Source: Macrostomum lignano (taxonomy: Eukaryota). Taken from it: a stretch of DNA of 64,000 bases. Under the pieces are notes generated by a model. The model was given only the letters and a program-made list of their open reading frames with translations, made no database searches and was not told the DNA's origin. The DNA lies in the NCBI GenBank assembly GCA_002269645.1, contig NIVC01002250.1, forward strand, positions 62,001 to 126,000. Direction: 5' to 3'. The translations under genes were made by a program, and so were the position numbers. Shown piece by piece: positions 10,630 to 62,388 of this stretch (positions are counted from its first letter, which is position 1; the number at the start of each line of letters is the position of its first letter).

Positions 10630-11420
10630 CAGGTGCATGTTGGCAGACTGTACCGAACCATCTTGGACGGACGCGGAGGCGACTTGGATCTCGTCATCGA
10701 TGATGAGTCGTACTTCCACATGTCCAGCCAAACGATTCCTGGCAACAGCTTCTACTATGCCACTGCGCACGCGGCGACGCTCCTGTTGAGAAGCGCGTTT
10801 CACCTCAAAAGAAGTTCGGCGACAAGATCCTGGTGTGGCTGGCCATCAGCAGGCATGGGGCTTCGCGAGTGTACATGTGTCACTCCAAGACGATGAACAA
10901 GGAGCTGTACGCAAACGAGTGCATTCGCAAGCGGCTGGTGCCATTTCTCAATGAGCAGCACAGCGATGGCAATTACCTGTTCTGGCCAGATCTGGCCTCC
11001 TGCCATTACGCCAAGGACGTGATCGAGGTGTTCCAGCAGCTGGACATCAACTTTGTCTCGAAGGAGCAGAATCCTTCCTGCGTGCCTCACCTTCGTCCAA
11101 TCGAGCACTTTTGGGGCATTTTGAAGCAGCAGGTGTACCATCATAGTTGGCAGGCTCAGACACTTCAGCAGCTGGAGAACAGAATCAAGAAATGCCTGAG
11201 GGAGATGGACTGGTCCGTTGTACATCACATGATGGGACAGGTCAAGTCGCAGATTCGCAGGGCGCGCGCTGATGGCTTTTAATCGGCTTATTGTTAACTC
11301 TATGATGATTCCTGTTTCTTGTTGAATACTTTCCCTGTTAAAAAGTTTGGTTATCCTGTTTATAACGCCACGAAATATAAACATTTAGAGACGTCCAGAT
11401 TTTAAGTGTTCACCCACGTA
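10630..11420 (+). mobile_element. 5'-truncated, frameshifted IS630/Tc1/mariner transposon with DD37E transposase (ITmD37E-like)
   Basis: VIDDESYF (D1) in ORF 10462-10896. After a frameshift near 10790-10830, FWPDLASCHY (D2) and RPIEHFW (E), with 37 residues between D2 and E. Stop at 11282. Putative right TIR ~11390-11418 (GACGTCCAGATTTTAAGTGTTCACCCACG) followed by TA. No left TIR or HTH domain seen. Confidence 0.88.
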
Positions 11421-11942: not shown

Positions 11943-14900
11943 CTATGTAGGCTTAGTTTTCTTCACCAGCGTGGAATTGCCGTACAGTACGTAGCGGAAC
12001 ATATCGCCAAGAGTGGAATCTACATACTTAATAGTCTCCATATTGTACTGTTTGCCGTGAAATCTGTACCAGAGATGCATAACGTAGTTCTTCTTACGCC
12101 AGTCCCATTTCCGCACGGGGCCATAGATCAAAGGCAGCTCGCCGCCAGTCCAATTGGGTCGGTCCATGCTCTCCTGCTCGATGTGGCAGTGCTCGGAGTA
12201 CATGGGGCACAGGGTGTTGGGATAGGTGACGGAGTGGGCAGCCCATATGCCATCGTCGAGAACCTGGTAGGTGACGTACCACATGCACATGAAGGTGGAG
12301 TTGGCCGCGGCCAGAAAGACGCCGTTGCAGAGTCCGCCGCCCGTCTCCCTGCCGATGGTGAACGGGTAGCGGCGCAGCGGCTCCAGCGGCTTCAATGTGA
12401 TCACGTCGATGTCGAAATAGGCGCCGCCAAGTACCAGCACGGCTTCCATGCGGATCACATCGGCCTGGTGCTCCTTCACGCGCATCGGCACCGAATAGGA
12501 CTGCGGTTGGGGAGACGCGGGAGCACTCGGTGTTGGGGTGACCTGCCATTAGCCCTACTCACTCAATAGCTTGCCCATTAGCCCTACTCACTCAATAGTT
12601 TGCCCATTAGCCCTACTCACTCAATAGTTTGCCCATTAGCCCCATTTACTCAATAGCTTGCCCATTAGCCCCATTCACTCAATAGCTTGCCCATTAGCCC
12701 CATTCACTCAGTTACCCTTTCCATTAGCCCCACTCAGTAGCCTTCTCATTAGCCCCACTCAGTAGCCTTCTCATTAGCCCCACTCAGTAGCCTTCTCATT
12801 AGCCCCACTCCCTAGCTTCCCCAAATCAACTCCATCCCCTCAGCAGCTTTCCGTATTAGTGGAATCAGTGAATTTAGGTACGAGTATATCAATACCTTTG
12901 TGGGCACGGGCCGATTAATCATGATAACGTTGCTTTCCCAGATGCCAGAGTCGGTGAGATTCTTCTTAAACGCTTCCCAATGCTCGCCATAAGGCTGCTT
13001 AGCGTACCAGATAACAGTAAATTTGGGCCGCATCACCCAGACTCCGCTGAGCATACAGACTAGATGATGAAATTGCAGCTGAGGATTCACAAACGGCAGT
13101 ACATAGTGAGCAACATTGGGCACAAGATACGGAGCGGTAGGCTTAGTCATAGCCTGCACTTCGGCAACAGTGTACTGCTTGCCGCTAGGAGAGTGCAGGC
13201 GCCATCCGCTCGTGTCAACAATTGGCAGTTTGTGCACCATCAGCTCGTTGATTCGAGACGCGTATTTGCCGGAGAATGGACGCACTGAGCTCTTCAGCTT
13301 GTCGAATTGGCTAATAATGTAGCTCTTATTCATGGGGGCGTACACGTAGTCTCGGCCGGGCACCTGGTCGGCGACCTTCACCGGCGTTGGCTTGACAGCA
13401 GCAGACGTGGACGAGACGGCAGTTCCTGCCAGAGGTCGGGAAGAGATGAGGGTGATGGTACAGGGTAGCGGGGAATCAAATCTTAGCGAGTCAAATCTCT
13501 GGGGGCGTCAAATCTCACCGAGAGGAAATCAAATCTCATTGGGAGGGAGTCAAATCTCACAGAGAGGGAGTCAAATTTCACTGAGAAGGAGTCAAATCTC
13601 ACTGAGAGGGATTCAAATCTTTACTGAGAGGGAGCTAAATCTCACTAAGAGGGAGTTGAATTTTCACCGAGAGGGAGTCAAATCTCACTAAGAGGGAGTT
13701 GAATTTTCACCGAGAGGGAGTCAAATCTCACTAAGAGGGAGTTGAATTTCCACTGAGAGGGAGCCAAATCTCACTGAGAGGGAGTCAAATCTCACTGAGA
13801 GAGGGAGTCAAATCTCACTGAGAGGGAGTCAAATCTCACTGAGAGAGGGAGTCAAATCTCACTGAGAGGGAGTCAAATCTCACTGAGAGAGGGAGTCAAA
13901 TCTCACCGAGAGGGAGTCAAATCTCACTGAGAGGGAGTCAAATCTCACTGAGAGAGGGAGTCAAATTTCACTGACAAAGGGACTCAAATCTCACTGAGAG
14001 GGAGTCAAATCTCACTGAGAGAGGGAGTCAAATTTCACTGACAAAGGGACTCAAATCTCACTGAGGGAGTCGAATCTCACAGAGAAGGACTCAAAGCTCA
14101 CGAATAGGTAATGAAATCTCACAGAAGTGAATCAATTAGAAGGAATAAAATCCACTCACGCGCAGCAGCAATGGGCTGTATGCTAGAATTGCCAAACAGT
14201 ATATGCCTAGCGATTTGGCCAAAAGCAGAGTTCAACTGTTTAACCGAATTGAAATCAACTGTCAAAGTCGCGCCCGGAGATTGCAGCTCCCGCTGCCTGC
14301 GCCACAGGTTAATAAGCCAGTTATCTCGCCAGTTCCAAGCGGGCGGAGAGTCGGGCGGCCCGTAGATCAGCCGCAAGCCGGCCGCCTGCCAGCCGGGCTT
14401 GTGCATGCCGCCAATCTCAATTTTGGCCAAGTGCGGGAAAGCCGATTGCAATGCGAACGGCAGCAGAGTGGAATGCTGATCAGGCAGAGAATCGTCAAGC
14501 AGCTGGTAGCACAGGTGCCAGGCTAGCAGGAATCGAGAGTTTCGCTTAGCCAAGTAAGCGGAGCTGCCAATGCCGCGGTCGTGCTGCAGGCCCAGCACGG
14601 TCTCGGCTGAACGAAGCGCCTGGCTAGCCGGCCGCATGGGCAGCACGTCAGTGTCCAGCCTGAGGCCGCCGAACAGTAGCACAGCCTCCAGGCCGATCAG
14701 ATCCGATCGATGACGCCAAGAGTTGATTGGCATATTGTACACAGATGCTGGAGGCTGGCGACGAGCCAGTACAACTGTGCGCTCCCAGACCGGCTCGGTG
14801 ACATTGGCAATGAGATGAGACCAGTAGCCGCCACTCAGAGGCTGCTGATGCCATAGAAACACGCGCGCCGGCTTAGCCAGGTGAAATGCGGCCAATAAGC

Positions 14901-15351
14901 TGAGCAGCTCGTGAAATTGCAGCTCAGCCCGGCGGAATGTCAGCACATAGTGGATAATGTTGGGGGCCAGGCCCGGCTCCGTAGCGTTGGCTATGCTAGT
15001 CCGCAGCTGCTCATAGTTCAATTGATGGCCTCCGGGTGTCTGCAGTTCGAGTTGACTCAACGTGAGCACGGGCTCCTTGGCGGTGAACAGCTGCTGGGCT
15101 AGGCGAGTATTAGCTCCGGCAAACTGTACAGCCACAGATCGAATAGTTTCCCAATTAGTCAGCGTGAAATTGCGCGCCTCGGACAGTTCAGACAGGCTAG
15201 TCCGGCCACCGTAATCGTACTCGTACGAGTAGGACAGATTCAAGAATTTGCCAATGTTGCCGCTCCGGCTGGCGTATGCGAGCACCAGAGCGATGGTGAC
15301 CAAGCATAGGATTGCCACTGCCCGGCGATAGAGCAGAGCTCGCTGCGTCAT
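11943..15351 (-). CDS. Type II membrane protein with two tandem GT32 (alpha-1,4-glycosyltransferase/OCH1-like, DxD) domains; 3 exons, 759 aa
   Basis: Exons 15351-14160 (donor GTGAGT, phase 1), 13425-12896 (acceptor CTGGCAG, donor GTATTG, phase 0) and 12500-11943 (acceptor CCGCAG, stop). Phases join in frame. N-terminal TM helix AVAILCLVTIALVLAYA. Domain 1: PNIIHY...HRSDLIGLEAVLLFGGLRLDTD. Domain 2: PNVAHY...HQADVIRMEAVLVLGGAYFDID. Confidence 0.88.
12545..12812. repeat. Intronic ~23-29-bp minisatellite (CCCATTAGCCCTACTCACTCAATAGTTTG) in GT32 intron 2
   Basis: Unit read directly; shortens to ~23 bp on the right. Confidence 0.93.
13480..14098. repeat. Intronic 21/23-bp minisatellite (GAGAGGGAGTCAAATCTCACT) in GT32 intron 1
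   Basis: Unit read directly; fills most of intron 13426-14159. Confidence 0.95.
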
Positions 15352-19141: not shown

Positions 19142-21469
19142 TCAATGCTCGAACAGGCTGACCAAGGTGCAACCGTTGGCGGTGACAAAGAACTGCACAG
19201 CCGGCAGCAGACAGTTGGCAATAGAGGCCAACTCGGCTGAGGCGTCAAAATTGTCCGGCCCGGCTTTGTTAAACAGCGGCGCGCAGGCGACGGACAGAAC
19301 CGGCGCCGCTCTGGCCGCGTCGGGGATCAGGGCGAACAGGCGTCGGTCCTGGCACGGCGCCGGCACGCGCACCATGGCGCCGAGATCAACCAGGCGAACG
19401 ATGACGCCAGCGGCTGCACCGCTGCTGTCGTTATCAACGGCGAGAATTCGAGCCCGATAGCACTGGCCGTCGTCTAGTTTAGCTACGCAGTTGGCGCCAA
19501 TTCGAATGTCGCCGGCGCGAAGCGGCAGCGCCATCTGGCTAAGCTCGCTATACAGGTACTGCAGCCGCGAGTGCAGCGCCTCGAACTGGCCGGCAAATTC
19601 GGCCAGCGGCAGAACTCGAACTCGATCGGCCGTGCCGCCGGGTAGCAACACGGCTGCGCGCCGTTTATTGTCAGTCAGGCGCAGGCTGGCCGGCGCTTCG
19701 CTGACATTACAGTCGGCGCCAATTTGAAGCAACTTTTTGATGGTGTAGCGCAGCCGGCGCGGGCTGGCAGAGTGGGGGAGGCGCTCGCCGCTGCCGCCGC
19801 CATTGGAAGCAGCCTGCAGTACGCCGCTGCGCACCCGCTGCCGGTGCTGCTCGCTGAAAAACTCGGCCAACTCCGGCCGGTCCAGCGGCAGGCCGTCTAG
19901 CAGGCCGGCCGGGGAGATGAGCTGCACAGGCCAGGCTGAATCGTCTGCGGACATGCAGCCGAATTCCACCAGCACCTGCGGGCGGACAGGGTGTGGGCAA
20001 GGGTTTATTATTATTAGCCTCACAGGTAGTTAGCTATTAGCCTCACAGGTATTAGCTATTAGCCTCACGGGTATTTAACTATTAGCCTTACAAGTATTAA
20101 ACTATTAGCCTCACAGGTAGTTAACTATTAGCCTCACAGGTAGTTAGCTATTAGCCTCACAGGTAGTTAACTATTAGCCTCACAGGTAGTTAACTATTAG
20201 CCTCACAGGTAGTTAAATATTAGCCTCACAAGTACGAGTAGTTAGCTATTAGCCTCACAGGTAGCTAATTATTAGCCTCATAGGTAGTTAACTATTAGCC
20301 TCACAGGTAGCTAATTATTAGCCTCACAGGTAGTTAGCTATCAGCCTCACATGTAGTTAACTATTAGCCTCACAGGTAGTTAACTATTAGCCTCACAGGT
20401 AGCTAATTATTAGCCTCACATGTAGTTAACTAACAGCCTCACAAGTAGCTAAATCTTAGCCTCACAAGTAGCTAATTATTAGCCTCACATGTAGCTAATT
20501 ATTAGCCTCACAAACGTCTATCTGTGGTGCAAATGAGCGCTTCATAGTAGGCATGCAGACGACCACTAATTAGTCCTAAAAATGGCCACTTATTTTAGCC
20601 CCACTAAATGGCCACTTTTAGCCGCAAAAAGGTCCTTCATTAGTCATATATACAGTTGCAAGGCAAGAACTAACCTCGCGTTCCATTAGCCGTTTGGCCA
20701 ACCAAGCGGCGGCCACCTCGCCGTACTGTCTATGGCACAAACCGGCCAGCTGACTACGATAGGAACGCGGCGGCGGGCCCTCATCTTCGGCCAAGTCTAG
20801 CGGACAACAGCGCAACAGGCAGGCGGGCAGACAGCACCTATTGCCAAAGTCCACAAATTCAACTAAGCCAAATCCGCCAGCCAGTACGCGCAATAACTTA
20901 GCCCGAAAATAACCGGCTTCAGGCGGGAAGTAAGCTACGCAAGCGACGTCGCTGCCAACGTTGTCAATAGGCAGATGAGGCAGAGAGTCTGCAATCCGAC
21001 GCAAATAGCTGTGCATGCTGGCTAGCTCAGCGCGGCATTCAATCGGTACTAAGCAGATCTGTTTAGTGCCCTGGGTGTGCAGCACAACGCACCGGGTCGG
21101 CTCGCTTGGTGGAGGCGGCTGACGACAGTAAGCTGTGGCGTAGCCCTGCTGGTTGTCAGGCTTTGAAACGCTATTGTTGTTGTTGCTTAAACTGCTAATG
21201 TTGTTGTTATCGCGATTGCGCGTATCATCTTTGTGACTAGCAAGATCGGCGGAAAGTCCGTTATGGACATTGTTAACATTGTCAACTATTCCACTGTCAA
21301 AATGTATTGGCGTTGTATTTCTTGGCGTTTCCGATTGCTGCTGCTGCTCAGCTGCTTCCTGCTCCAATTGTTGGCACGATAAACGACGACGTTCGAGAAA
21401 GTCGCGCCTAACCCGGTAGTATAATCCTCTGCTACTAGTGGAAGACCTTTCGATGATGTTCATGGTCAT
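19142..21469 (-). CDS. Two-Tudor-domain (extended Tudor, TDRD-like) protein; 2 exons, 542 aa
   Basis: Exons 21469-20675 (donor GTTAGT, phase 0) and 19975-19142 (acceptor CCGCAG). Tudor 1: CVAYFPPEAGYFRAKLL...VEFVDFGN. Tudor 2: CVAKLDDGQCYRARIL...VRLVDLGA. An acceptor at 21511 is in frame, so extra upstream coding exons are possible. Confidence 0.85.
20030..20512. repeat. Intronic 23-bp minisatellite (ATTAGCCTCACAGGTAGTTAACT) in the Tudor gene intron
   Basis: Unit read directly. Confidence 0.95.
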
Positions 21470-23862: not shown

Positions 23863-26731
23863 CAGTAACACCCAGGGAGGAACTGGAACACCCAATATGG
23901 AACTGTAACACCCACCAAGGATTTGTAACACCCACCAAGGACCTGTCACACCCACCAAGGAACTGTAACACCCACCAAGGACTTGTAACACCCACCAAAG
24001 ACCTGTAACACCCACCAAGGAACTGTAACACCCACCAAGGACCTGTAACACCCACCAAGGAACTGTAACACCCACCAAGGACCTGTAACACCCACCAAGG
24101 AACTGTAACACCCACCAAAGACCTGTAACACCCACCAAGGAACTGTAACACCCACCAAGGACCTGTAACACCCACCAAGGAACTGTAACACCCACCAAGG
24201 ACCTGTAACACCCACTAAGGACCTTTAACACCCACCAAGGACCTGCAACACCCACCAAAGACCTGTAACACCCACCAAGGAACTGTAACACCCACCAAGG
24301 ACCTGTAACACCTACTAAGGACCTAGCGCAGAAGCAAGCAACCAACCTGAGGCGAGGCAGACTGCTGGTGCTGTTCCAAGTCCTCGAGCTGCTGCAGATC
24401 TCCAGGCCGATGGTCCAGCTGCTGGTGCATGTTCAAATCTGATTTAGTAACAAAGCTCAACTGGCACTGGTTGCACCGTTTGCCGCTACTAGAAGCAGCA
24501 GCAGCAGAAGAAGAATTATCGTCGTCAAAGTGGCGCTGCAGATGCTGGGTGAACACGCCGGTGAGGCCGCTAGAATCGCCGCCGATCGCCCCAGGTGCGT
24601 AGGCCGCGCCAGACGAGCTGGGGAAAGTGATTCGGATAGCTTTGAGACAGAGCGGGCACAGCAGGTGTGGCGAGGCGGCGTGCATCCGGCAGAAGTGAGT
24701 CAGGATGTCGCGCAGTACGCTAGTCCGGAAGCTGCACAGCTGGCAGGCGTAAGGCATCTGCCTGCGCAGGTGGCGAGTCCGCATGTGCCTGGCGAACTGC
24801 TCCGTATTGGCGAACTCTCTGTCGCATACGCGGCACAGTTTTCGGCCAGCCGGAGTCAGGTGCGAATCCGCTCGATGCTCGGCCAGCTGGTAGTGTCCGG
24901 CAAAGGTGGCCGGACAGGCCGGACAGCGGACAATCTCGGTCGAGCAGTCTTGCAGCAGAGCCGAAACCGACTGCGAAGCCGGCTCAAAATGGCCGAGAAT
25001 GTGCCGAACTGTGCTCAAATTCGAATATAGAATCTTTGAGCACAGGTGGCAACGGAAGCGAAGGTCCTGACGTGGCTCCGGCTGGGAGGCCTGCTGGCAC
25101 TCCTGCCTGGCGAAGTAGTACACGTCTAGGGCCACCAGCACCTGCGAGAGGTTGGATAATATCATTTCGAATCGATAGGCCTAAAATTACTGCCAGAATC
25201 CTTCCTACCCATGATTGTACATGAAATTTACGTCGTATTCCATATTTGTATATGGCTTTCACATTATATCTCATATCTGTACATGACTTTCACATTATAT
25301 CCCATATTTGTACATGACTTTCACATTATATCCCATATCTGTACATGACTTCCACATTATATCCCATATTTGTACATGGCTTTTACATTATATCCCATAT
25401 TTGTACATGACTTTCACATTATATCCCATATCTGTACATGACTTTCACATTATATCCCATATTTGTACATGACTTTCACATTATATCCCATATCTGTACA
25501 TGAATTTCACATTATATCCCATACTCGTATTTGTACATTACTTTTACATTATATCCCTATTTGTATATGACTTTCACATCCTATCCTGAATGCATTTGAA
25601 AAGTTAGCCGCAGACCATTTATTGACATACAGTCGCACTCACCGTATTGCCATCCTGATCGCACGGATTCTGAGAGTCGTGCACGTACAATTGATTTGGA
25701 TCGTCGCCAAAAGTGACAATTTCGATGCCTTCTTCTAGTAGGGGAAGGCCCTCTTCGTCAGCTGCCGATTCCGCTTGTGTAGCAGCGACAGCCTCCGAGC
25801 CCTGCGGGGAGGGAATGCAAGATTCGGGTTGTGGAGATTCCAAGATTCTGGATAGAGATCCCAAGATTCCGGATAGAGGTCCCGAGATTCGGATAGATAT
25901 CCCAAGATTCGGGATATAGATCCCATGATTAGGGATAGAGATCCCAAGATTCGGGATATAGATCCCATGATTAGGGATAGAGATCCCAAGATTAGGGATA
26001 GAGATCCCATGATTAGGGATAGAGATCCCAAGATTCGGATAGCGATCCCAATATCAGATTTGTTGACAAACCTTTGCGGCAGACTGAGCAGCAGCGGCGG
26101 CAGCAGCAGCGGCAGCGGCGGCGGCTGCAGCGTCAGCCTCGGCGCTGGCGAGCTGGCGGAGCTCAGCCGCGGTGGCAACCCGAACTCCGGGCGGCAGCGG
26201 ATCGGTGAGGCCGGCAACCCGGCCCTGGACCAACAAGCCGTTATGCTTGGGCCGCTGCACGCAGCTGGAGATGTGAATCGCTCCCTGATCCCTATGCTGG
26301 AAGGCGGATTCGGCCAAATCCAGAGCCTGGTGCTCTTCATCGCCGACGCCCAGTCCGGCTAGGGCGCCTTTGACCGGGCTGGACCGCTGCGCCTGTCGCT
26401 GGCAGATGACGGCTGGCGCGCCATCTTCAGTCAGCAGCCGGTCCAGTCGCCAGTCCTGCTGAGCTAGAGCTTCGTGAGCAGCTGCTACGCCAGCGTGAGC
26501 TAGTACGCCAAGCGAACTAGTCAGCAGAAGGCCGTTGGCATCTGTGGCGGCCTCCTCGGCGGTGCCGACAACATTCACAGCCTCGGCTAGGGGTCGCATG
26601 CCGGATTGAAAACGCTCCAGATTGGCTCTGCGCCTATCCAGCTCTTGCAGTTGAATGTCTGACAGGGGCTCCTCTTCGCATGTCATTGTGAGACTGCGGC
26701 CAACGCCGCGTAGCACCTGCGGCAGCAGCAT
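22497..26731 (-). CDS. POGZ/ZNF280-family C2H2 zinc-finger protein without a pogo transposase domain; 4 exons, ~679 aa
   Basis: Exons 26731-26072, 25801-25643 (alternative donor at 25631), 25141-24347 and 22922-22497; all phase 0 with GT/AG. N-terminal LTMTCEEEPL resembles the family motif LFMECEEEEL. Finger cluster FRCHLCSKIL...CRVCDREF...HMRTRHLRRQMPYACQLCSFRTS...THF...LLCPLCLKAIRI and C-terminal CLEC...C...CRYATCCGPAYQRH follow the ZNF280/POGZ finger order. Confidence 0.85.
22978..23460. repeat. Intronic 21-bp minisatellite (AATCGATAATCTCAGTATCCT)
   Basis: Unit read directly; it explains ORF 22939-23466. Confidence 0.93.
23828..24324. repeat. (TAAC)n microsatellite followed by a 20-bp minisatellite alternating GGACCT/GGAACT (40-bp dimer)
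   Basis: ACACCCACCAAGGA[C/A]CTGTA units read directly. Confidence 0.95.
25215..25585. repeat. Intronic ~31-bp minisatellite (ATATCCCATATTTGTACATGACTTTCACATT)
   Basis: Unit read directly. Confidence 0.93.
25835..26050. repeat. Intronic 21-bp minisatellite (GATAGAGATCCCAAGATTCGG)
   Basis: Unit read directly. Confidence 0.92.
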
Positions 26732-32500: not shown

Positions 32501-35500
32501 TCTATGGGAATTTCTATGATTGATTATAACTTCTACGGGAATTTCTATGATTGATTATGGCTTCTATGGGAATTTCTATGATTGATTATGGCTTCTATGG
32601 GAATTTCTATGATTGATTATGGCTTCTATGGGAATTTCTATGATTGATTATGGCTTCATGGATATTTCTATGATTGATTATGGCTTCTACGGGAATTTCT
32701 ATGATTGATTATGGCTTCTATGGGAATTTCTATGATTGATTATGGCTTCTACGGGAATTTCTATGATTGATTATGGCTTCTACGGGAATTTCTATGATTG
32801 ATTATGGCTTTATGGATATTTCTATGATTGATTATGGCTTTATGGATATTTCTATGATTGATTATGGCTTCTATGGGAATTTCTATGATTGATTATGGCT
32901 TCTATGGGAATTTCTATGATTGATTATGGCTTCATGGATATTTCTGGGATCGACTAGGGCTTCAGTGGAATTTCTGGGATCGACTAGGGCTTCAGTGGAA
33001 TTTCTGGGATCGACTAGGGCTTCAGTGGAATTTCTGGGATCCACTAGGGCTTCAGGGAAATTGGTGAGATAAGCTAAAACTTCAGCGTTCTCAGGAGATT
33101 GGTTTCCAAGTTTCCAATTGTTTCGTCTATAAATAACAAGATTTATAGAACAGGGAACTTGAGCACATTGAGAACAAATGGCGGCTATAAGATTATAAGT
33201 AAAACAAACCTGTATGTCAAACATGCTCGAAGGGTCGACCTTGATCTTGAACTCGCGGTCAATATATTCGGCAAACTTGCGTTTATTCTGATCCTTAACC
33301 TTCATTAGTTCGCGCAAGAAATTCTGATCATTTTGCAGCGACTCCAGGCCGCGCAGTTTGAACAGATCGGTGACCCAGTCGAATCCAATCTTCTCAGTGA
33401 TAAGCTCAGACAGGTTGGGGTTGCACAGCAGCAGCCAACGCCTAGGCGTGATTCCGTTAGTCTTGTTCTGGAACTTCTCCGGCCACATGGCGTAGAAATC
33501 GCGGAACACGTCAGATTTGATGAGCTCAGAGTGGATCCGGGCAACGCCATTCACAGCGTGGCTGCCAACCACGCACAGGTAGGCCATGTTGATGCGCTTG
33601 TCGCCGTCCTCCTCAACTAGGCTCATCCGGCGAACGCGGTCCATGTCGCCGGGGAATTTTTCCAGCACAAGATGGATGAAGCGCTGGTTGATATCGTAGA
33701 TAATCTCCAGGTGACGGGGCAGGCAGTACTGCAGGGTGGCAACTGGCCAGCGCTCCAGAGCCTCGGGCAGGATAGTGTGATTAGTATAGGCGAAGGTCTT
33801 CACGCAGATGTCCCAGGCCTCCTCCCATTTCAGGCCTTCAATGTCAACAAGCACCCGCATGAGCTCGGGTATGGCCAGGCTGGGATGCGTGTCATTCAGC
33901 TGGATGGCCACCTTGTCCGGGAAGGCGGTAAAGTCCGTGCGCACGTGAGCGGTTGAGCCAAATTTCGAGGCCTTGAATCGGCGAATGATGTCCTGCAGGG
34001 TGGAGGCGACTAAGAAGTACTCCTGTTTGAGACGGAGCTCCTTGCCTTCGAAGAAGTTATCGTTTGGATAGAGCACTCGGCTGATGTTCTCGGCTTCGTT
34101 GCGGTCGCACACGGCCGAGATGTACTCACCGGAGTTAAATGAGTGCAGATTGAAGCTCTGCGGAGCTTTGGCTGTCCACAGGCGCAGCGTGTTGCAGTTG
34201 TTATTGCCGTAGCTGGGAGGGGTGGAGGGCATTTATTATTAGCCAATCAGTTTCTATCACCAAGGATTTCTAAAGTATTCAGACTTTACTTAGGGAGTCA
34301 ATGGGTTTTTTGTTAGTCAATGTACTGAGGGAATTGATCAGATATAGTCAAGGAACCAAGGGGAATTGATCAGATATAGTCAAGGAACCAAGGGGAATTG
34401 ATCAGATATAGTCAAGGAACCAAGGGGAATTGATCAGATATAGTCAAGGAACCAAGGGGAATTGATCAGATATAGTCAAGGAACCAAGGGGAATTGATCA
34501 GATATTGTCAAGGAACCAAGGGGAATTGATCAGATATAGTCAAGGAACCAAGGGGAATTGATCAGATATAGTCAAGGAACCAAGGGGAATTGATCAGATA
34601 TAGTCAAGGAACCAAGGGGAATTGATCAGATATAGTCAAGGAACCAAGGGGAATTGATCAGATATAGTCAAGGAACCAAGGGGAATTGATCAGATATAGT
34701 CAAGGAACCAAGGGGAATTGATCAGATATAGTCAAGGAACCAAGGGGAATTGATCAGATATAGTCAAGGAACTGGGGGGAATTGATCAGATATAGTCAAG
34801 GAACCGAGGGGAATTGATCAGATATAGTCAAGGAACCAAGGGGAATTGATCAGATATAGTCAAAAGGAACCGAGGGGAATTGATCAGATATTGTCAAAAG
34901 GAACCAAGGGGAATTCATCAGATATAGTCAAAAGGAACCGAGGGGAATTGATCAGATATTGTCAAGGAACCAAGGGGAATTGATCAGATATAGTCAAGGA
35001 ACCAAGGGGAATTGATCAGATATAGTCAAGGAACCAAGGGGAATTGATCAGATATAGTCAAAAGGAACCGAGGGGAATTGATCAGATATAGTCAAGGAAC
35101 CAAGGGGAATTGATCAGATATAGTCAAGGAACCAAGGGGAATTGATCAGATATAGTTCTGCGGAGCTTTGGCTGTCCACAGACGCAGCGTGTTGCAGTTG
35201 TTATTGCCGTAGCTGGGAGGGGTGGAGGGCATTTATTATTAGCCAATCAGTTTTTATCACCAAGGATTTCTAAAGTATTCAGACTTTACTTAGGGAGTCA
35301 ATGGGTTTTTTGTTAGTCAATGTACTGAGGGAATTGATCAGATATAGTCAAGGAACCAAGGGGAATTGATCAGATATAGTCAAGGAACCAAGGGGAATTG
35401 ATCAGATATAGTCAAGGAACCAAGGGGAATTGATCAGATATAGTCAAAAGGAACCGAGGGGAATTGATCAGATATAGTCAAGGAACCAAGGGGAATTGAT

Positions 35501-43662: not shown

Positions 43663-44690
43663 GCATACAGGATTACTCTGAGCGATCCTGTCACCACAAA
43701 AGTAATGCTAACATCGTTTATTTAGTTTTTCAAACCTAGCAGCAACGTTCGAATTGCAATGTTTGATTCAGAAAATTCCTTAATCCAGGAGAAGTTGCTT
43801 AGTGGCGCAAAATTTGGCTACTTTTGCAAATGTTACTCAGTATACGTATATATTCTGTGGTTTCGAAGTTAAAAATGACTCAATCTGCAGACGAGCATTT
43901 TAAGTGTAATAAGTTGCTTTTACCTAATATAGTGCTTTCTGTATAATTAATTCTCTTGATACCGTTAGAACAATTGAGCGTTAGAAGAATTAAGCAGAAA
44001 ATTATAGAATATGTTTCATACATCGTCATATTCATACAAAAATACACAAAGGGCTTGTTTAACCGGAGTTGGAATGCTATAGGCAGGCATAATTCATCTG
44101 TTCCCAAAATAGAAATTTGGGTGTACTGCACAACTATCACATAGAAATTTAGAATACATGTACATTACCGGTACGTGCATACAGCTAACCCACTGTTTAT
44201 GTGTCCCGTGACTTGGTCTTTACTAGAGAAAAAATGTCTCTCCTTCTCTCTAGTTCTCTCCGGAGACGTGTACTCTCGTCTCCATTCACGAAATGGCAGG
44301 CAAGATAGGAGAGAAGTAGAAGGAGAGAGAGGGCTCCACACAGCAGTGCGTCGACACAAACGTATACACCCACACAACTGTACACCCGCACTACAGGTCT
44401 GCAAACCCAAATCTTTTATAGGCAGGCTTCACAGGAGTCTCAAGCTTAACTAAATTATCATTTTTAGCAAGCTGTTGTTTTGTAATAGAATTATTTATTA
44501 AACCCCAGCTATTTTGTCACTTTTAGCTCCTTTCAGCTCCTTACTTTACTTGCGGCAATGGCGTCGTGTAAGTAGCTCTTTTGTCTTCGTGAATCATTCA
44601 TGATTAGGACACAAAAATGACTATGAAAGTTCTCCAACACGTGTAGTTTCAGCATCCAAAAAGAAACTGGAGTCGCAGGTGTCCCTGGAC

Positions 44691-45710
44691 ATGCGCGAGA
44701 ATGACTCAAAACAACTACTGGCCTTCCTGAATTGCGCCAAGTGCCGCGACTTGGCATGCGACGCTGTTGAGACCCATTGCTGCAGAGTGCTGCTCTGTGC
44801 TAAATGCCTTGAACAGCGAGCTAGCCAGTGCCCGAAGTGCTCGGAACCATGCAGCGCCTCGCCGTGCCACCTGGCCAGACGCCTGATCGGCATGCAGCCA
44901 TGGTGCTGCTCTGAATGCGGCAAGGAGACGAACCGGTCTGAGCAGACCGACCACCTGCTGATCTGTCCGCAGCGGGTCCGGTCGTGTCCAGCCAGCGGAT
45001 GCAGCTTCACCGGCCTCACTGACTCGTTCATTGATCATCTTATCCAAGAGCACAAAGATGCCCTGATGAAAGAAGTCGACAAGCTGTTCCCACCAGTTAA
45101 GAGGCAAAGGCGTTCTTCTGACTCAAGCGAGTCTAGCAACGACTCTGATAGCAGCAGGCGCCGTGCGATGGTCTTGCGCTACCAACGGTACAGAGAAAGA
45201 ATGCACGATTCCGCTATTCGGGAGCGCTCGCGCGTCCGTTTAGCTGTCACTGGCAAAAACTACTGCACGGGACCGCTCAACGGACCGCCTTGCAACTGTT
45301 GCGACGGCAGGTGCGGGCCAGACAATGGATGCAACTGTGTAGACTGCATGCGTCTCGACCTTGCTAGCTTCAACATCAGCAGACCGCTAACGCTGATTAA
45401 TCGAGAGGGCGCCGTGGCGCGAATCAGCTTACAGGCCGCCAAGTTCTACTGCGGCCGAGCTGTGATGGGCAGCGACCCGAGAACTGACGGATTCTGCGGG
45501 CCCAACGACGGCAACAACTGTCACGCCTGTTACAAGCTGGATCAGCAGCTGCGCAATCGTTACGCCGACATTGCCGCAGAGTGGGACCTAGATGGACTCG
45601 GTGTGAGAGACATCATTGACATGACCGAAACGAACGAAGACGACGACGACGAGTACGATTTTGATGACGACGACGGCCTGGTCGCAATGGGTCTTGACGT
45701 CATCGATTGA
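44691..45710 (+). CDS. Intronless RING + TRAF/SINA-type zinc finger + twin Cys-rich repeat protein with acidic tail (putative E3 ligase), 339 aa
   Basis: RING-like CAKC...THCCRVLLCAKC...CPKC. Finger CSECG...HLLICPQRVRSCPASGC...HLIQEH. Repeats YCTG...CNCCDGRCGPDNGCNCVDCMRLD and FYCGR...DGFCGPNDGNNCHACYKLD. First ATG at 44691; the frame is open a little further upstream. Confidence 0.85.
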   Translation: MRENDSKQLLAFLNCAKCRDLACDAVETHCCRVLLCAKCLEQRASQCPKCSEPCSASPCHLARRLIGMQPWCCSECGKETNRSEQTDHLLICPQRVRSCPASGCSFTGLTDSFIDHLIQEHKDALMKEVDKLFPPVKRQRRSSDSSESSNDSDSSRRRAMVLRYQRYRERMHDSAIRERSRVRLAVTGKNYCTGPLNGPPCNCCDGRCGPDNGCNCVDCMRLDLASFNISRPLTLINREGAVARISLQAAKFYCGRAVMGSDPRTDGFCGPNDGNNCHACYKLDQQLRNRYADIAAEWDLDGLGVRDIIDMTETNEDDDDEYDFDDDDGLVAMGLDVID

Positions 45711-58573: not shown

Positions 58574-60390
58574 ACTTTTAATAGTTTCTTTCTAAACATA
58601 CTGTTTTTTGCATCTCGATTGTTGTGTTGTGGCACATCGCTTATATTCGAGGACTCGGTCGATTTTTGATTAATTAAAGCGTCTCTCTTCCTGATTCATT
58701 GCACTTTTACAATGCACTTTGTGCTAACATATTAATTTTGATAAACTGATCGTCAAAAACACCAAGTAACTCTAACTAACACTGCTAAAGCCGGGTTATC
58801 AAAACGAGCAATAAATCTTTTGTAACGCTTTTCTTATCGAATAAGTCAATTTTGATAACTGAATTCGATTATTCTTTGTGAAAAAACCCGTGCAGCAATC
58901 CGACGTTGGCAAATGGGTACTTTTACATTGCATCGACGTTTGACTGACGTGTAGCATCACGCCGGTGGACGTCGGAGTATTGCACGGTGGAAGGACAACA
59001 GAACGCAGCGCTCTTGACAGACTAAAAAGACTGCTGCGTTTTAAACAAAACTATCTCTCTAAGAAGTTCCTTCACGTGGATAATCCATATTCCTTCTTCC
59101 ACTGCTTTTATCAATCAGCAAAGCCCGTGAGGCTTCCCTCCGGGCTGGAGGCAGCGCAGGATTTGTTTATTCAAGGTTGGTCGGCGGTGCGGCTTCGTTG
59201 CTCTGGCCAGCGCTGGGCCTGGAGCCGCCACTTCACTCGTCAATGAGGAGAGAATCTGAAAAAAGCTGCTTACTCCTAGGCGAGGGAGCGACTGGATAAA
59301 GTGGGGGTTGATAGATCATTTCTATTCGGTCGATGGGACCAGAGCGGGAGACAGCGGCGGAAATAGGCTTAGATTTGCTGGGGGGAATTGTAAAGATGAG
59401 GATGTGGGAAGTTTCCCGGAACAATAATAAGCTTCGGGCGCTGATTTCGGCTGGCTGAGAGTGGTTATGAGGAAAATGCGGTCCACGGGGAGGTTATTCC
59501 CCGTCAATCCACTGGGGAACTGATGGAATTCTGAACTGAACACAGAGGCATTTTGGTCTAAATATTTGACGCACATCCTGCCTAAACTGCTGCAGTTGCA
59601 CTTTAACTGGGATTGTAAATCAAGGAATTAACTATCCACTTGAGTAATCATATTTTCTTGCAAAAAGCGATTACAAAACATACATGTAGGACAAGATCAT
59701 TTGAAACTCGGTTTCACAAGTTTGTCAACTTAGATTTGAAACAGAAATTCTTCAAGATTCAATAGGAAGTTATAAGTTCTGTTCGTCCCTGTATTTTAGT
59801 AATTAGTTGAAGACGTTTTTAACTTTGCTGCATGGATTAAACATGCCTCTATCGCTCTCCGCTTCATTTAGTTTGCTACGCTTCAGACCAACCAATCAGA
59901 ATTCGCCAACATTGTGATCCGAGCATTGCAAAACTCCTCCATCCTTGATAGGAGCTTAGTGATAGATAGACTAGTATTGGGTGGTTCGAGTCTCAGTGAC
60001 TCTCGATACGTATCGTCTAGAATCCCTCCGGATCCTGATCTAAGCCTGGATTAACTGCATATCAGTTTACGAACTATTGGAGACCGAATAGCCGAATTCT
60101 GTTCAAGCAAATCTCCAACTGATCTTCCATCATCACACTTTTGGTAAGTTCGAGGTAGGCAGCATTGACCTAGAATTGCAGTACGAGTGTGATAGGAAAA
60201 ATGCGGTGCTTTTTTGTAGAAGTTTTGTTCCCATTATTGATTAATGAGCTACCATCTGATACGAGCTAATTTGTGGCGTCGACATGAATCGCACGTCTCA
60301 GAACGGTTGCATCATTCTCCAATACCATTGAGAACCTCTCAGAACAGTTGCATCATCCTTCAGTACCATTGAGAACGGCCGTTGCTATGG

Positions 60391-61285
60391 GACATCTGGT
60401 GTCTGTGAGTACCGTGTGACATGTTGGACATCTGGTGTCTGTGAGTACCGTGTGACATGCTGGACACCTGGTGTCTGTGAGTACCGTGTGACATGTTGGA
60501 CACCTGGTGTCTGTGAGTACCGTGTGACATGTTGGACAACTGGTGTCTGTGAGTACCGTGTGACATGTTGGACACCTGGTGTCTGTGAGTACCGTGTGAT
60601 ATATTGGGACACCTGGTGTCTGTGAGTACCGTGTGACATGCTGGACACCTGGTGTCTGTGAGTACCGTGTGACATGCTGGACACCTGGTGTCTGTGAGTA
60701 CCGTGTGACATGTTGGACACCTGGTGTCTGTGAGTACCGTGTGACATGTTGGACACTGCAGTGTCTGTGAGTACCGTGTGACATGTTGGACACTGCAGTG
60801 TCTGTGAGTACCGTGTGACATGCTGGACACCTGGTGTCTGTGAGTACTGTGTGACATGTTGGACACCTGGTGTCTGTGAGTACCGTGTGGACATGTTGGA
60901 CACCTGGTGTCTGTGAGTACCGTGTGATATGTTGGACATCTGGTGTCTGTGAGTACCGTGTGATATATTGGGACACCTGGTGTCTGTGAGTACCGTGTGA
61001 CATGTTGGACACTTGGTGTCTGTGAGTACCGTGTGACATGTTGGACACCTGGTGTCTGTGAGTACCGTGTGACATGTTGGACACCTGGTGTCTGTGAGTA
61101 CCGTGTGATATATTGGGACACCTGGTGTCTGTGAGTACCGTGTAACATGTTGGACATCTGGTGTCTGTGAGTACCGTGTGATATATTGGGACACCTGGTG
61201 TCTGTGAGTACCGTGTGATATATTGGGACACCTGGTGTCTGTGAGTACCGTGTAACATATTGGACACCTGGTGTCTGTAAATTAC
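60391..61285. repeat. 36-bp minisatellite, ~25 copies (GACACCTGGTGTCTGTGAGTACCGTGTGACATGTTG)
   Basis: Unit read directly; it explains ORFs at 60353-61309. Confidence 0.97.
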
Positions 61286-62388
61286 CTGAAGGGATATGCT
61301 ATAAAACATTAGGACACCTGGTTTTCTAAGTTACCTATGCAGAGTGGCCCCGTAAGAAGTTGTCTTTAACAGCTGAAGTCCTAAAACTTGCTTTAACGCC
61401 TCAAAGTGCATGTTTTTCTGGTCAAAAAGCTCAAAGATGTATAGAGTGTGATACCCAGCTAGCGGCGGCTCATCCATGGCCCAGCAGTATCGCTCGGCTC
61501 GCGCTAAAAAGAAACTTTTTTACCATCGAAAAAAGTTAATCATCTTCGTGCCGAGGGGATTGCGGGAAGGGGAAAGGCCTGAGAGAGGCTGCAGCGTGGG
61601 AGCGGAGCACGGCGCAACAGAATCTGGTCTCTTGCCACAGCCGACCAGTTGGTTCGGAAATGAAGGAGGAGCCGCCGAGCTCGAGCCGCGGCACAAATTC
61701 CCGGATCGCTTCATCATCCGCCAATTTGGCCGAGAGAGGAGAGACTGGGCGAGGCCAGGAACGGATCAAGGAGACCTCAAACGAGGAATCTGGAACTACC
61801 CAATCCAAACAGTCTGATCAGCCTACACACACGTATACAAAACGGACAAATCATCAATTTTGTTCTGGCGAACGATGTTTTAAAAAATGTTTTAATTTCA
61901 TCTTGCACTGAAAATCATGGGGATTCCGACAGACGGCTTGGCTGTAGAGTTTACAACTCCAGATTCCTCGTTCACGGTGTCCTTGGCGTAGGCTGGCCGC
62001 CAGCGGCAATCAAGGCAAATTTGGCGTCGCCAGAAGAGACGAGAAGACCGGCCGGCGGCGAGTCAGGGGATAACGAACTCAAATCCATGCGATGGGAAAA
62101 TAGCTGACGGGATCAACAGGCGCACGGACTGCGGCTTAGTACAATCTGTAGGGCCTGGATTTTGCGCACTCTGGACTGCTTAGACCTGCAATAACGGGGC
62201 ATTTCATCGGGGCAGTCAACTGACGGACTCTCCAATATTGAAGATCGGAGTCCCTGAAACCTCACTAGTTCGACACTTACATGCTCTAGTGAAGCACCCC
62301 TTTAATTAACAATTTTGTTTAAATCTTGCATAATTCCTCGATTTTTAAACGTCCGAGAAAGACCTGACGCCCTCCACCATTTCCACAG

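What the first reader, a model, noticed from the sequence alone, without database searches (positions are those of the whole stretch)
11943..15351. Two complete GT32 glycosyltransferase domains fused in one membrane-anchored protein
Seen: what the ORF track shows as three ORFs splices in frame (GCG C|GTGAGT...CAG|GA ACT) into one 759-aa protein: TM anchor, GT32 domain 1 (DTD), Ser/Thr/Pro/Ala linker (TAVSSTSAAVKPTP), GT32 domain 2 (DID). Both DxD motifs are intact and the domains are strongly diverged, so the duplication is old. Established: characterised GT32 enzymes (A4GALT, A4GNT, OCH1) have one catalytic domain, while two-domain GTs such as LARGE and EXT build glycans by alternating sugars. 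Inference: a possibly undescribed bifunctional or processive Golgi enzyme making a lineage-specific glycan (mucus, adhesive or glycocalyx). This is the best candidate for new biology in the window.
Basis: partly seen in the sequence, partly recalled or inferred. Interest (0 to 1): 0.72.

Follow-up and report, generated by a model that had tools for sequence, protein, structure and literature searches.

The report
Flatworm glycosyltransferase with degenerate twin domain
This is a real, already annotated but unstudied Macrostomum lignano gene for a membrane-anchored sugar-transferring enzyme with two copies of its catalytic fold, of which only the second looks fully equipped for catalysis; similar tandem proteins exist in amphioxus, acorn worms and abalone.

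Summary
On the minus strand, three exons (15351-14160, 13425-12896, 12500-11943) join in frame through GT..AG introns full of tandem repeats. They encode a 759-aa type II membrane protein with two homologous GT-A domains (30% identity, E 6e-61).

The window is Macrostomum lignano scaffold NIVC01002250.1. The protein matches GenBank PAA59563.1 and UniRef A0A1I8H491 over their shared length. Two 99% copies elsewhere in the genome keep the same exons.

The interpretation needs correcting in two ways.
- **The domains are not equivalent.** Domain 2 keeps 17 of 17 family signature residues and matches Pfam PF04488. Domain 1 keeps 10 of 17 and has no Pfam match. It lacks the Arg that aligns with donor-binding R174 of yeast Och1 (now Gly220), the Tyr before DxD (now Arg231), and a late conserved His (now Asn348). 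It still folds confidently (pLDDT 93.5).
- **The tandem architecture is not unique.** About 9% of the top 150 homologue clusters have two or three domains (Branchiostoma, Saccoglossus, Ptychodera, Haliotis), most with only one canonical domain. The flatworm fusion arose independently.

Best reading: one active retaining Golgi glycosyltransferase fused to a degenerate sibling domain that is probably non-catalytic. A bifunctional enzyme is not excluded. Interest is moderate.

The parts
14160..15351 (-). Exon 1 (ATG at 15351-15349): cytoplasmic tail, signal-anchor, stem and the whole of domain 1, plus the first base of codon 398
   Evidence: Identical exon boundaries in two other genomic copies.
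15271..15327 (-). Signal-anchor / transmembrane segment (about aa 9-27, AVAILCLVTIALVLAYA core)
   Evidence: It is the only hydrophobic maximum in the protein (Kyte-Doolittle). Modelled as a helix over 2-30.
14176..14976 (-). Domain 1 GT-A core (aa ~126-392), the degenerate copy
   Evidence: 30% identical to domain 2. AF2 pLDDT 93.5 and pTM 0.92 with a family alignment. Foldseek matches retaining GT-A enzymes. No Pfam hit. Keeps 23 of 33 conserved columns and 10 of 17 key residues.
14647..14655 (-). Domain 1 DxD motif (D233-T234-D235)
   Evidence: Thr at x also occurs in 30 of 138 single-domain homologues.
14692..14694 (-). Gly220 codon in domain 1, at the position where the family has Arg (92-95%), spaced as Och1 R174
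   Evidence: Invariant in all six database copies.
14308..14310 (-). Asn348 codon in domain 1, at the position where the family has His (91-93%; H716 in domain 2)
13426..14159 (-). Intron 1 (GT..AG), almost entirely about 30 copies of a 21-22-nt tandem repeat (13488-14122)
   Evidence: Its length differs between genomic copies: 734, 918 and 811 nt.
12896..13425 (-). Exon 2: linker (TAVSSTSAAVKPTP...), stem 2 and the first half of domain 2
   Evidence: The linker is low-confidence or disordered in AF2.
12501..12895 (-). Intron 2 (GT..AG), with about 10 copies of a 29-nt tandem repeat (12546-12823)
   Evidence: It is 395, 1232 and 1219 nt in the three copies.
11943..12500 (-). Exon 3: second half of domain 2 and the stop codon (11945-11943)
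12405..12413 (-). Domain 2 DxD motif (D604-I605-D606), inside the PF04488 match
12075..12077 (-). His716 codon of domain 2, the conserved late His of the family

Best explanation
The locus is one three-exon Macrostomum lignano gene. It encodes a type II (Golgi/secretory-pathway) membrane protein built as N-terminal anchor, stem, GT-A domain 1, flexible Ser/Thr/Pro/Ala linker, stem, GT-A domain 2.

Domain 2 is a canonical member of an uncharacterised, mostly marine-invertebrate branch of the GT32-like retaining GT-A glycosyltransferases. I infer that it is the working, divalent-metal- and nucleotide-sugar-dependent catalytic unit.

Domain 1 comes from an old duplication within the Macrostomum lineage. 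It keeps the fold and the DxD but has lost several residues that the family conserves almost without exception. These include the Arg that aligns with the donor-sugar-binding R174 of Och1, the Tyr of GGxYxDxD, the N-G pair, and a late conserved His. I infer that domain 1 is catalytically dead or strongly altered. It would then serve as a structural, acceptor-binding or pseudo-dimer partner for domain 2, rather than as a second sugar-adding site.

Shown: the gene structure, the homology, the fold prediction, the residue losses, the parallel architectures elsewhere and the independent origin. Inferred: transcription as one mRNA (from how the GenBank models were made), Golgi location, retaining mechanism, and loss of catalysis in domain 1.
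For: Gene model:
- In-frame GT..AG splicing gives 759 aa.
- The protein matches PAA59563.1 and A0A1I8H491 over their shared length (the entries differ only at the extreme N-terminus). Five further 99%-identical database proteins carry the same domain fusion, four of them the same junction.
- The PAA models derive from a genome-guided RNA-seq assembly that was cut at experimentally mapped SL trans-splice and poly(A) sites (PMC5730564).
- Three genomic copies keep the ORF and splice sites although their introns differ in length.
- Exon 2 has no hydrophobic segment, so domain 2 can reach the lumen only through the exon 1 anchor.

Domain 2 is canonical:
- PF04488 at 29.4 bits against a cut-off of 23.
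- 32 of 33 columns that are >=80% conserved, and 17 of 17 key residues.
- AF2 pLDDT mostly 94-98.
- All best homologue matches map to it.
- The D588/R591/D604 spacing equals Och1 D171/R174/D187.

Domain 1 is degenerate:
- No Pfam hit.
- 23 of 33 columns and 10 of 17 key residues. Only 3 of 138 single-domain homologues score <=10.
- The changes are R->G220, Y->R231, N-G->S263-S264, W->P290, H->K310 and H->N348, all fixed in every copy.
- There are more amino-acid differences between the copies in domain 1: 7-10 nonsynonymous against 1-2.

Domain 1 is still folded: pLDDT 93.5, pTM 0.92, with the same order of secondary-structure elements as domain 2, and it matches retaining GT-A structures.

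The same pattern of one canonical and one or more degenerate domains holds in most multi-domain relatives.

The origin is independent. NJ bootstrap support is 90% for a Macrostomum clade holding both domains. In 98% of replicates no deuterostome tandem domain falls between them.
Against: - No RNA reads were examined directly. Single-transcript expression rests on how the deposited models were built.
- Domain 1 keeps the DxD, H134, H214, D217, the G-G pair, E312 and R382, so a changed rather than lost activity is possible.
- Its nearest relative (Mlig024067, P0024/P0064; 37% identity in the family-HMM alignment) is a stand-alone membrane-anchored protein of the same divergent subfamily (13 of 17 key residues). 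That protein may be a working enzyme with another specificity.
- The equivalence of H716/N348 with the conserved His of Och1 (H463), or with the metal-binding His of GT8 enzymes, is inferred from position. I had no model coordinates to superpose.
- pN/pS for domain 1 (0.5-0.7) rests on 4-10 substitutions per class and is not decisive.
- No member of this family has a measured activity.
Confidence: 0.58

Rival explanations
1. Both domains are active glycosyltransferases with different donor or acceptor specificity. The protein would then be a bifunctional, LARGE/EXT1-like enzyme that adds two sugars in succession or builds a repeating glycan.
For: - Both DxD motifs are intact.
- Domain 1 folds confidently as GT-A.
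- It keeps 23 of 33 conserved columns.
- It belongs to a divergent Macrostomum subfamily that also exists as a stand-alone anchored protein.
- The ORF is intact in three gene copies.
Against: - Domain 1 lacks the Arg (92-95% conserved; K in 5 of 138 and G in only 1 of 138 single-domain proteins) and the late His (126 of 129 non-gap), plus the Tyr, the N-G pair, a Trp and another His.
- The Arg equivalent in Och1 is assigned to donor-sugar binding.
- Both domains belong to the same family, unlike LARGE (GT8+GT49) or EXT (GT47+GT64).
- In most multi-domain relatives only one domain is canonical.
Confidence: 0.25
2. Domain 1 is a decaying relic with no function of its own beyond acting as a long stalk that holds domain 2 away from the membrane.
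For: There are more amino-acid changes in domain 1 between the gene copies, with pN/pS 0.5-0.7 against 0.15-0.3. Catalytic-type residues have been lost.
Against: - The duplication is old (30% identity), yet the 1.2-kb exon is still open in all three copies.
- Most fold-defining residues are kept.
- AF2 models a compact domain.
- In deuterostomes the degenerate N-terminal domains form one clade shared by amphioxus and hemichordates (62% bootstrap). This implies long retention of such domains.
Confidence: 0.1
3. The fusion is an annotation artefact or only one of several isoforms. Two adjacent genes would be expressed separately: a 410-aa domain 1 protein from transcripts that retain or end in intron 1, and domain 2 from its own message.
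For: Reading through the exon 1 donor gives an ORF that stops 12 codons later at 14119. About 7% of M. lignano transcription units are polycistronic precursors resolved by trans-splicing.
Against: - The GenBank pipeline cut units at mapped trans-splice sites and did not cut here in any of three copies.
- An independent annotation (UniRef A0A1I8...) also fuses the two halves.
- Domain 2 alone would have no signal-anchor.
- Intron 1 is almost pure tandem repeat with no room for another first exon.
- The frame is preserved across both junctions in all copies.
Confidence: 0.07

Closest known systems
CAZy GT32 retaining GT-A enzymes (yeast Och1, PDB 9N3S; A4GALT/A4GNT; Pfam PF04488)
   Same: - Type II anchor.
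- GT-A fold by prediction.
- The motif (S/A)D..R..(x)L...GG.Y.D.D, with the same D/R/DxD spacing as Och1 D171/R174/D187.
- Domain 2 passes the PF04488 threshold.
   Different: - Only the ~40-residue DxD region is recognisably similar. The profile-to-Och1 E-value is 0.04 and Foldseek TM is 0.3-0.5.
- This family has its own conserved N-terminal (VPNxxH) and C-terminal (H.E, YAxHLW, G...R.I.YG) motifs, and no characterised member.
- Known GT32 enzymes have one domain; here there are two.
Tandem and triple-domain homologues in Branchiostoma (XP_066281009, 838-840 aa), Saccoglossus (XP_006824871, XP_077863513), Ptychodera (XP_070554338) and Haliotis (XP_067657883)
   Same: - Same family and N-terminal anchor.
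- Two or three GT-A copies in one chain.
- Typically one canonical copy (16-17 of 17 key residues) and degenerate siblings (9-12 of 17).
   Different: - They arose by separate duplications. The flatworm domains group with Macrostomum single-domain paralogues, not with the deuterostome domains.
- All are unnamed predictions with no functional data.
Bi-domain glycosyltransferases with one inactive domain, e.g. EXTL3 (GT47+GT64)
   Same: There are two GT domains in one Golgi type II protein, and one of them is unable to do its expected transfer. The EXTL3 paper explains the ineffectiveness of its GT47 domain and reports UDP bound only in GT64 (PMC9178029).
   Different: - The EXTL3 domains belong to different families and folds. 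Here both are copies of one family.
- Inactivity is measured for EXTL3 and only inferred here.
LARGE1 (GT8 + GT49), a truly bifunctional alternating polymerase
   Same: A membrane-anchored protein with two GT domains. LARGE1 structures appear among weak Foldseek matches (7zvj, 7ui6).
   Different: LARGE has two different, fully equipped active sites. Here the domains are paralogous and one lacks signature residues.

Membership tests
GT32 / Pfam PF04488 (Gly_transf_sug) | Match to PF04488 above the gathering score | tested here: met
   Domain 2 scores 29.4 bits against a cut-off of 23, E 1.3e-6. This holds for domain 2 only.
GT32 / Pfam PF04488 (Gly_transf_sug) | The same match for domain 1 | tested here: not met
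   No PF04488 hit at E <= 10. Its subfamily relatives P0024 and P0064 also carry no precomputed Pfam domain. Domain 1 is related only through its homology to domain 2.
GT32 / Pfam PF04488 (Gly_transf_sug) | GT-A fold | tested here: met
   AF2 pLDDT is mostly 94-98 for domain 2 and 93.5 for domain 1. The top Foldseek hits are GT-A retaining enzymes, including Och1 9N3S. This is a prediction, not a solved structure.
GT32 / Pfam PF04488 (Gly_transf_sug) | DxD plus the upstream Asp and Arg that bind the donor sugar (Och1 D171, R174, D187-x-D189) | tested here: met
   Domain 2 has D588, R591 and D604-I-D606 with identical spacing. Domain 1 has D217 and D233-T-D235 but Gly220 in place of the Arg, so the feature is not met for domain 1.
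GT32 / Pfam PF04488 (Gly_transf_sug) | Conserved C-terminal His in the donor site (Och1 H463) | tested here: inconclusive
   The family has a 91-93% conserved late His (H716 in domain 2, Asn348 in domain 1). Its equivalence to Och1 H463 could not be checked by superposition because no coordinates were available.
GT32 / Pfam PF04488 (Gly_transf_sug) | Retaining transfer from a nucleotide sugar, metal dependent | not testable with these tools
   This needs enzyme assays. No member of this sub-family has been characterised.
GT32 / Pfam PF04488 (Gly_transf_sug) | Formal CAZy family assignment | not tested
Bifunctional two-domain glycosyltransferases (LARGE, EXT1/2 type) | Two domains, each with a complete set of catalytic and donor-binding residues | tested here: not met
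   Domain 1 keeps 10 of 17 family key residues and lacks the Arg, Tyr, N-G and two His positions.
Bifunctional two-domain glycosyltransferases (LARGE, EXT1/2 type) | Domains of different GT families giving two different linkages | tested here: not met
   Both domains are paralogues of one family, 30% identical.
Type II Golgi membrane protein | A single N-terminal signal-anchor and a luminal bulk with N-glycan sequons | tested here: met
   There is one hydrophobic maximum near the N-terminus and ten N-x-S/T sequons spread over both domains. Localisation itself was not tested.

The most novel reading that the evidence does not exclude
Domain 1 is not dead but has a new donor or acceptor specificity. 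The protein would then be the first GT32-type enzyme with two working sites in one chain, making a lineage-specific disaccharide or repeating glycan.

A weaker but broader form of this reading concerns the family as a whole. An uncharacterised invertebrate GT32-like family appears to have built 'pseudo-enzyme plus enzyme' tandems at least twice (Macrostomum and deuterostomes), and probably several more times. This points to a general need for a non-catalytic partner domain, for example a covalent pseudo-dimer.
Probability: 0.22. Interest if true: 0.6.

Novelty: new variant of a known kind. Interest (0 to 1): 0.36.

Why it matters
The gene itself is ordinary in that it is already deposited as a hypothetical protein and belongs to a known fold and superfamily. 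What is worth knowing is the family-level picture.

An uncharacterised GT32-like family is spread over flatworms, nemerteans, annelids, molluscs, hemichordates and amphioxus. It repeatedly occurs as tandem proteins in which, in most cases, only one copy keeps the full catalytic signature. In deuterostomes this arrangement appears to predate the amphioxus-hemichordate split.

That makes the family a natural test case for how glycosyltransferase pseudo-domains arise and what they do, such as acceptor recognition, pseudo-dimer scaffolding or altered specificity.

M. lignano has RNAi, transgenesis and a published lectin panel (PMC5730564, PMC4890501), so the question is experimentally approachable. 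It does not overturn current knowledge.

Tried and rejected
- The word-indexed homology search was nearly blind for this family. It returned 1, 11 and 3 hits. The exhaustive HMMER search was needed.
- A single-sequence PDB search of domain 2 gave only noise, with fructose-1,6-bisphosphatase at E 0.24.
- The profile-against-PDB search aligned only the short DxD-region motif. It matched bacterial glycosylating effectors and toxins and Och1. I took these as evidence for the retaining GT-A superfamily only, and fetched none of them.
- I first read Thr in the DTD of domain 1 as a sign of degeneracy, because the Och1 paper says retaining GTs have a hydrophobic x. I dropped this because 30 of 138 single-domain homologues also have Thr.
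- The full-length AF2 run modelled the C-terminal half of domain 1 poorly (pLDDT <50). This was an alignment-depth artefact, since the domain alone with 79 sequences gave pLDDT 93.5. No inter-domain geometry could be judged.
- P0019 seemed to span the linker and suggested a tandem orthologue. It turned out to be a single-domain protein with its own anchor.
- P0007 (918 aa, M. lignano) looked like a tandem paralogue. It is a chimeric model interrupted by reverse-transcriptase-like sequence.
- The gene identifiers were not found in the searchable literature or in the supplements of one M. lignano expression paper, so no tissue expression is known.
- Rfam found nothing in the window.
Full report
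**1. The observation**

The minus strand between 15351 and 11943 holds three ORFs. They join through two canonical introns:
- Intron 1: GCTGCGC|GTGAGT ... CTCTGGCAG|GAACTG (14160>13425).
- Intron 2: CACAAAG|GTATTG ... CAACCGCAG|TCCTAT (12896>12500).

The joined sequence is 2280 nt, or 759 codons plus a stop. Both introns consist almost wholly of tandem repeats: about 30 copies of a 21-22-nt unit at 13488-14122, and about 10 copies of a 29-nt unit at 12546-12823.

The protein has these features:
- One hydrophobic segment, near the N-terminus.
- Only two DxD motifs, DTD at 233-235 and DID at 604-606.
- Ten N-glycosylation sequons.
- Two halves that align over 334 residues at 30% identity, E 6e-61.

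The alignment includes about 70 residues of 'stem' before each catalytic core. The duplicated unit was therefore the whole luminal part of a type II protein.

**2. Where it comes from, and whether the fusion is real**

The window is from Macrostomum lignano, scaffold NIVC01002250.1 of assembly GCA_002269645.1. The spliced protein matches GenBank PAA59563.1 (BOX15_Mlig019258g2) and UniRef A0A1I8H491 over their shared length; the entries differ only at the extreme N-terminus. PAA84848.1, PAA57727.1, A0A1I8JBU2 and A0A1I8HY80 are 99% identical and carry the same domain fusion. A0A1I8HY80 differs just before the linker.

The PAA models were not ab initio predictions. They come from a genome-guided RNA-seq assembly (StringTie/TACO). 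Its transcription units were cut into genes only at experimentally mapped spliced-leader trans-splice sites and poly(A) sites (PMC5730564). None of the three copies was cut between the domains.

I recovered two of the other genomic copies (L001, L002). Both keep open frames and the same GT..AG sites, while intron lengths differ: 734, 918 and 811 nt for intron 1, and 395, 1232 and 1219 nt for intron 2.

Exon 2 encodes no hydrophobic segment. A separately expressed domain 2 would therefore lack any route into the secretory pathway.

I did not see reads myself, so expression as one mRNA is well supported but indirect. An intron-1-retaining isoform would give a 410-aa domain-1-only protein stopping at 14119, and cannot be excluded.

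**3. What the domains are**

Domain 2 passes Pfam PF04488 (29.4 bits, cut-off 23). Domain 1 has no Pfam match.

An exhaustive HMMER search found 1827 relatives at E<1e-3. Most of the listed top 150 are single-domain proteins of 330-400 aa, and every best match lies in domain 2. Named members come from nemerteans, an annelid, abalones, hemichordates, amphioxus and M. lignano itself. All are 'uncharacterized' or carry automatic names.

AlphaFold2 models domain 2 at pLDDT mostly 94-98. Domain 1, given its own 79-sequence alignment, reaches pLDDT 93.5 and pTM 0.92 with the same order of strands and helices.

Foldseek against the PDB returns retaining GT-A enzymes for both domains: GT8 proteins, LgtC, glycogenin, the UGGT catalytic domain, bacterial glycosylating effectors, and the GT32 enzyme Och1 (9N3S). 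TM-scores are 0.3-0.5 and identity is 8-15%.

A family profile against PDB sequences aligns only the (S/A)D..R...L...GG.Y.D.D stretch, with Och1 at E 0.04.

The family is therefore a distant, uncharacterised branch of the GT32-like retaining GT-A enzymes. It is not a close relative of A4GALT, A4GNT or Och1.

**4. The two domains are not equivalent**

I built a family HMM from 94 single-domain homologues. It has 33 columns that are at least 80% conserved. Domain 2 keeps 32 of them and domain 1 keeps 23.

I then scored 17 key positions, given here in domain 2 numbering: H504, H585, D588, R591, G599, G600, Y602, D604, D606, N633, G634, W660, H663, H680, E682, H716, R743. Domain 2 scores 17 and domain 1 scores 10. 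Only 3 of 138 single-domain proteins score 10 or less.

The losses in domain 1 are:

| Family residue (domain 2) | Domain 1 |
|---|---|
| R591 | G220 |
| Y602 | R231 |
| N633-G634 | S263-S264 |
| W660 | P290 |
| H680 | K310 |
| H716 | N348 |

All are fixed in every database copy.

The Och1 crystal-structure paper lists D171, R174, H463 and D187-M-D189 among the conserved donor-site residues. It places R174 in the hydrogen-bond network to the donor mannose (PMC12312940). D588, R591 and D604 of domain 2 have exactly that spacing. Domain 1 keeps the two Asp positions but has Gly for the Arg.

I infer, without a superposition, that the late His (H716) corresponds to the C-terminal His of Och1 and of GT8 enzymes.

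The three gene copies differ by 7-10 nonsynonymous changes in domain 1 and by 1-2 in domain 2. This gives pN/pS of 0.5-0.7 against 0.15-0.3. The counts are small, so this is suggestive only.

**5. The architecture is not unique**

Thirteen of the top 150 cluster representatives (about 9%) have two or three domains.
- The Branchiostoma protein (838-840 aa, three domains) is predicted the same way in several species and hybrid assemblies.
- Saccoglossus has 594- and 754-aa two-domain proteins.
- Ptychodera has a 590-aa one.
- Haliotis has 821- and 959-aa ones.

In most of them one domain has 16-17 of 17 key residues while the others have 6-12. The recurrent changes are at the same Arg, N-G and late-His positions.

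Neighbour-joining trees of domain instances (200 bootstraps) give the following:
- Both flatworm domains fall in a Macrostomum clade (90%).
- Domain 1 sits next to the stand-alone paralogue Mlig024067 (P0024/P0064; 86%).
- The deuterostome C-terminal canonical domains form one clade (91%).
- Their N-terminal degenerate domains form another (62%).
- In 98% of replicates no deuterostome tandem domain falls inside the smallest clade joining the two flatworm domains.

The flatworm fusion is therefore an independent event. The deuterostome tandem seems to predate the amphioxus-hemichordate split. These are NJ trees on divergent sequences, and long-branch attraction among degenerate domains is a caveat.

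**6. Mechanism**

My best reading (0.58) is one working retaining glycosyltransferase, domain 2. It is carried behind a folded but catalytically degenerate sibling that supplies the membrane anchor. The sibling probably also has a structural, acceptor-binding or pseudo-dimer role. EXTL3, where one of two GT domains is ineffective, is a precedent in other families (PMC9178029).

The alternatives are:
Domain 1 keeps DxD and much of the site, and its nearest relative is a stand-alone anchored protein with 13 of 17 key residues.
- A neutral relic or spacer (0.10). This fits poorly with a 1.2-kb exon still open after divergence to 30% identity.
- An annotation or isoform artefact (0.07). This fits poorly with section 2.

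**7. Surroundings**

Nothing nearby suggests a glycan pathway.
- Upstream on the same strand lies a Tudor-domain gene (19142-21469). It is also upstream in the two paralogous loci.
- Downstream is a DDE_3 transposase fragment (10833-11282).
- Further away are a C2H2 zinc-finger ORF and a glycogen phosphorylase exon.

The single-domain paralogue P0009 is intronless. Domain 1 is also encoded without an intron, whereas domain 2 is split.

**8. Verdict**

The finding is real and correctly read at the sequence level. It is already in the databases as a hypothetical protein, and its architecture is shared with unnamed proteins in other phyla.

It is best filed as a new variant of a known kind: a GT32-like enzyme with a degenerate tandem domain. 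I found no paper describing it.

No tissue, substrate or product is known. A link to adhesive or mucus glycans is speculation. The PNA and other lectin markers published for M. lignano (PMC4890501) would make an RNAi test straightforward.

Noticed in passing
window 13488-14122 and 12546-12823; L001 7199-8116 and 8647-9878; L002 7205-8015 and 8546-9764: Both introns are essentially tandem-repeat arrays, with a 21-22-nt unit in intron 1 and a 29-nt unit in intron 2. Array length differs up to three-fold between the three 99%-identical gene copies (395 against about 1220 nt for intron 2). On the coding strand each intron 1 unit reads ...CTCTCAGTGAGATTTGACT..., so every unit carries an acceptor-like CTCTCAG and a donor-like GTGAGA. 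The repeats occur nowhere else in the window.
   Followed up: partly
window 14119-14159: Reading through the exon 1 donor site adds only 12 codons (EWILFLLIDSLL) before a stop. Intron 1 retention would therefore give a 410-aa anchored protein with domain 1 only.
   Followed up: no
P0015, P0018, P0023, P0031, P0060 (Branchiostoma, Ptychodera, Saccoglossus and unnamed ENA proteins): The deuterostome relatives share an architecture of degenerate N-terminal domain(s) plus a canonical C-terminal domain. The N-terminal and C-terminal domains each form their own clade across amphioxus and hemichordates. This suggests a tandem older than the split between those two lineages.
   Followed up: partly
P0024 / P0064 (M. 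lignano A0A1I8IHM1, BOX15_Mlig024067g1): This is a stand-alone, membrane-anchored paralogue of the divergent domain 1 subfamily. It has DTD, K for the conserved R, I for Y, no Pfam match, and keeps the late His. It shows that the divergence of domain 1 began in a free-standing gene lineage.
   Followed up: partly
P0007 (UniRef A0A1I8F4W8, 918 aa, M. lignano): This database model joins a truncated GT domain, about 400 residues of low-complexity and reverse-transcriptase-like sequence, and a complete paralogue (52% identical overall to the query, matching domain 2). It is probably a retroelement insertion or a chimeric gene model, not a true tandem protein.
   Followed up: no
window 10833-11282 (+), overlapped by an antisense ORF at 10800-11384 (-): A fragment of a DDE_3 (Tc1/mariner-type) transposase (PF13358, 33.9 bits) lies about 660 bp downstream of the glycosyltransferase stop codon.
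   Followed up: partly
window 19142-20023 and 20618-21469 (-): Tudor-domain exons lie upstream on the same strand. A 555-aa Tudor gene also lies upstream of the glycosyltransferase in both paralogous loci (L001, L002), so the duplicated blocks extend beyond this gene.
   Followed up: partly
window 32883-34232 (-), 24323-25165 (-), 44679-45710 (+), 60353-61309 (-): Other coding pieces in the window are a glycogen phosphorylase exon (PF00343, E 5e-146), a C2H2 zinc-finger ORF, a weak Sina zinc-finger match below the Pfam cut-off, and a double-zinc-ribbon ORF.
   Followed up: no
L003 3001-4206 (M. lignano NIVC01000143.1): The single-domain paralogue P0009 (401 aa) is encoded without introns, as is domain 1. 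Domain 2 carries an intron between PVPTK and SYSV. Intron gain or loss has therefore occurred within this young gene family.
   Followed up: no
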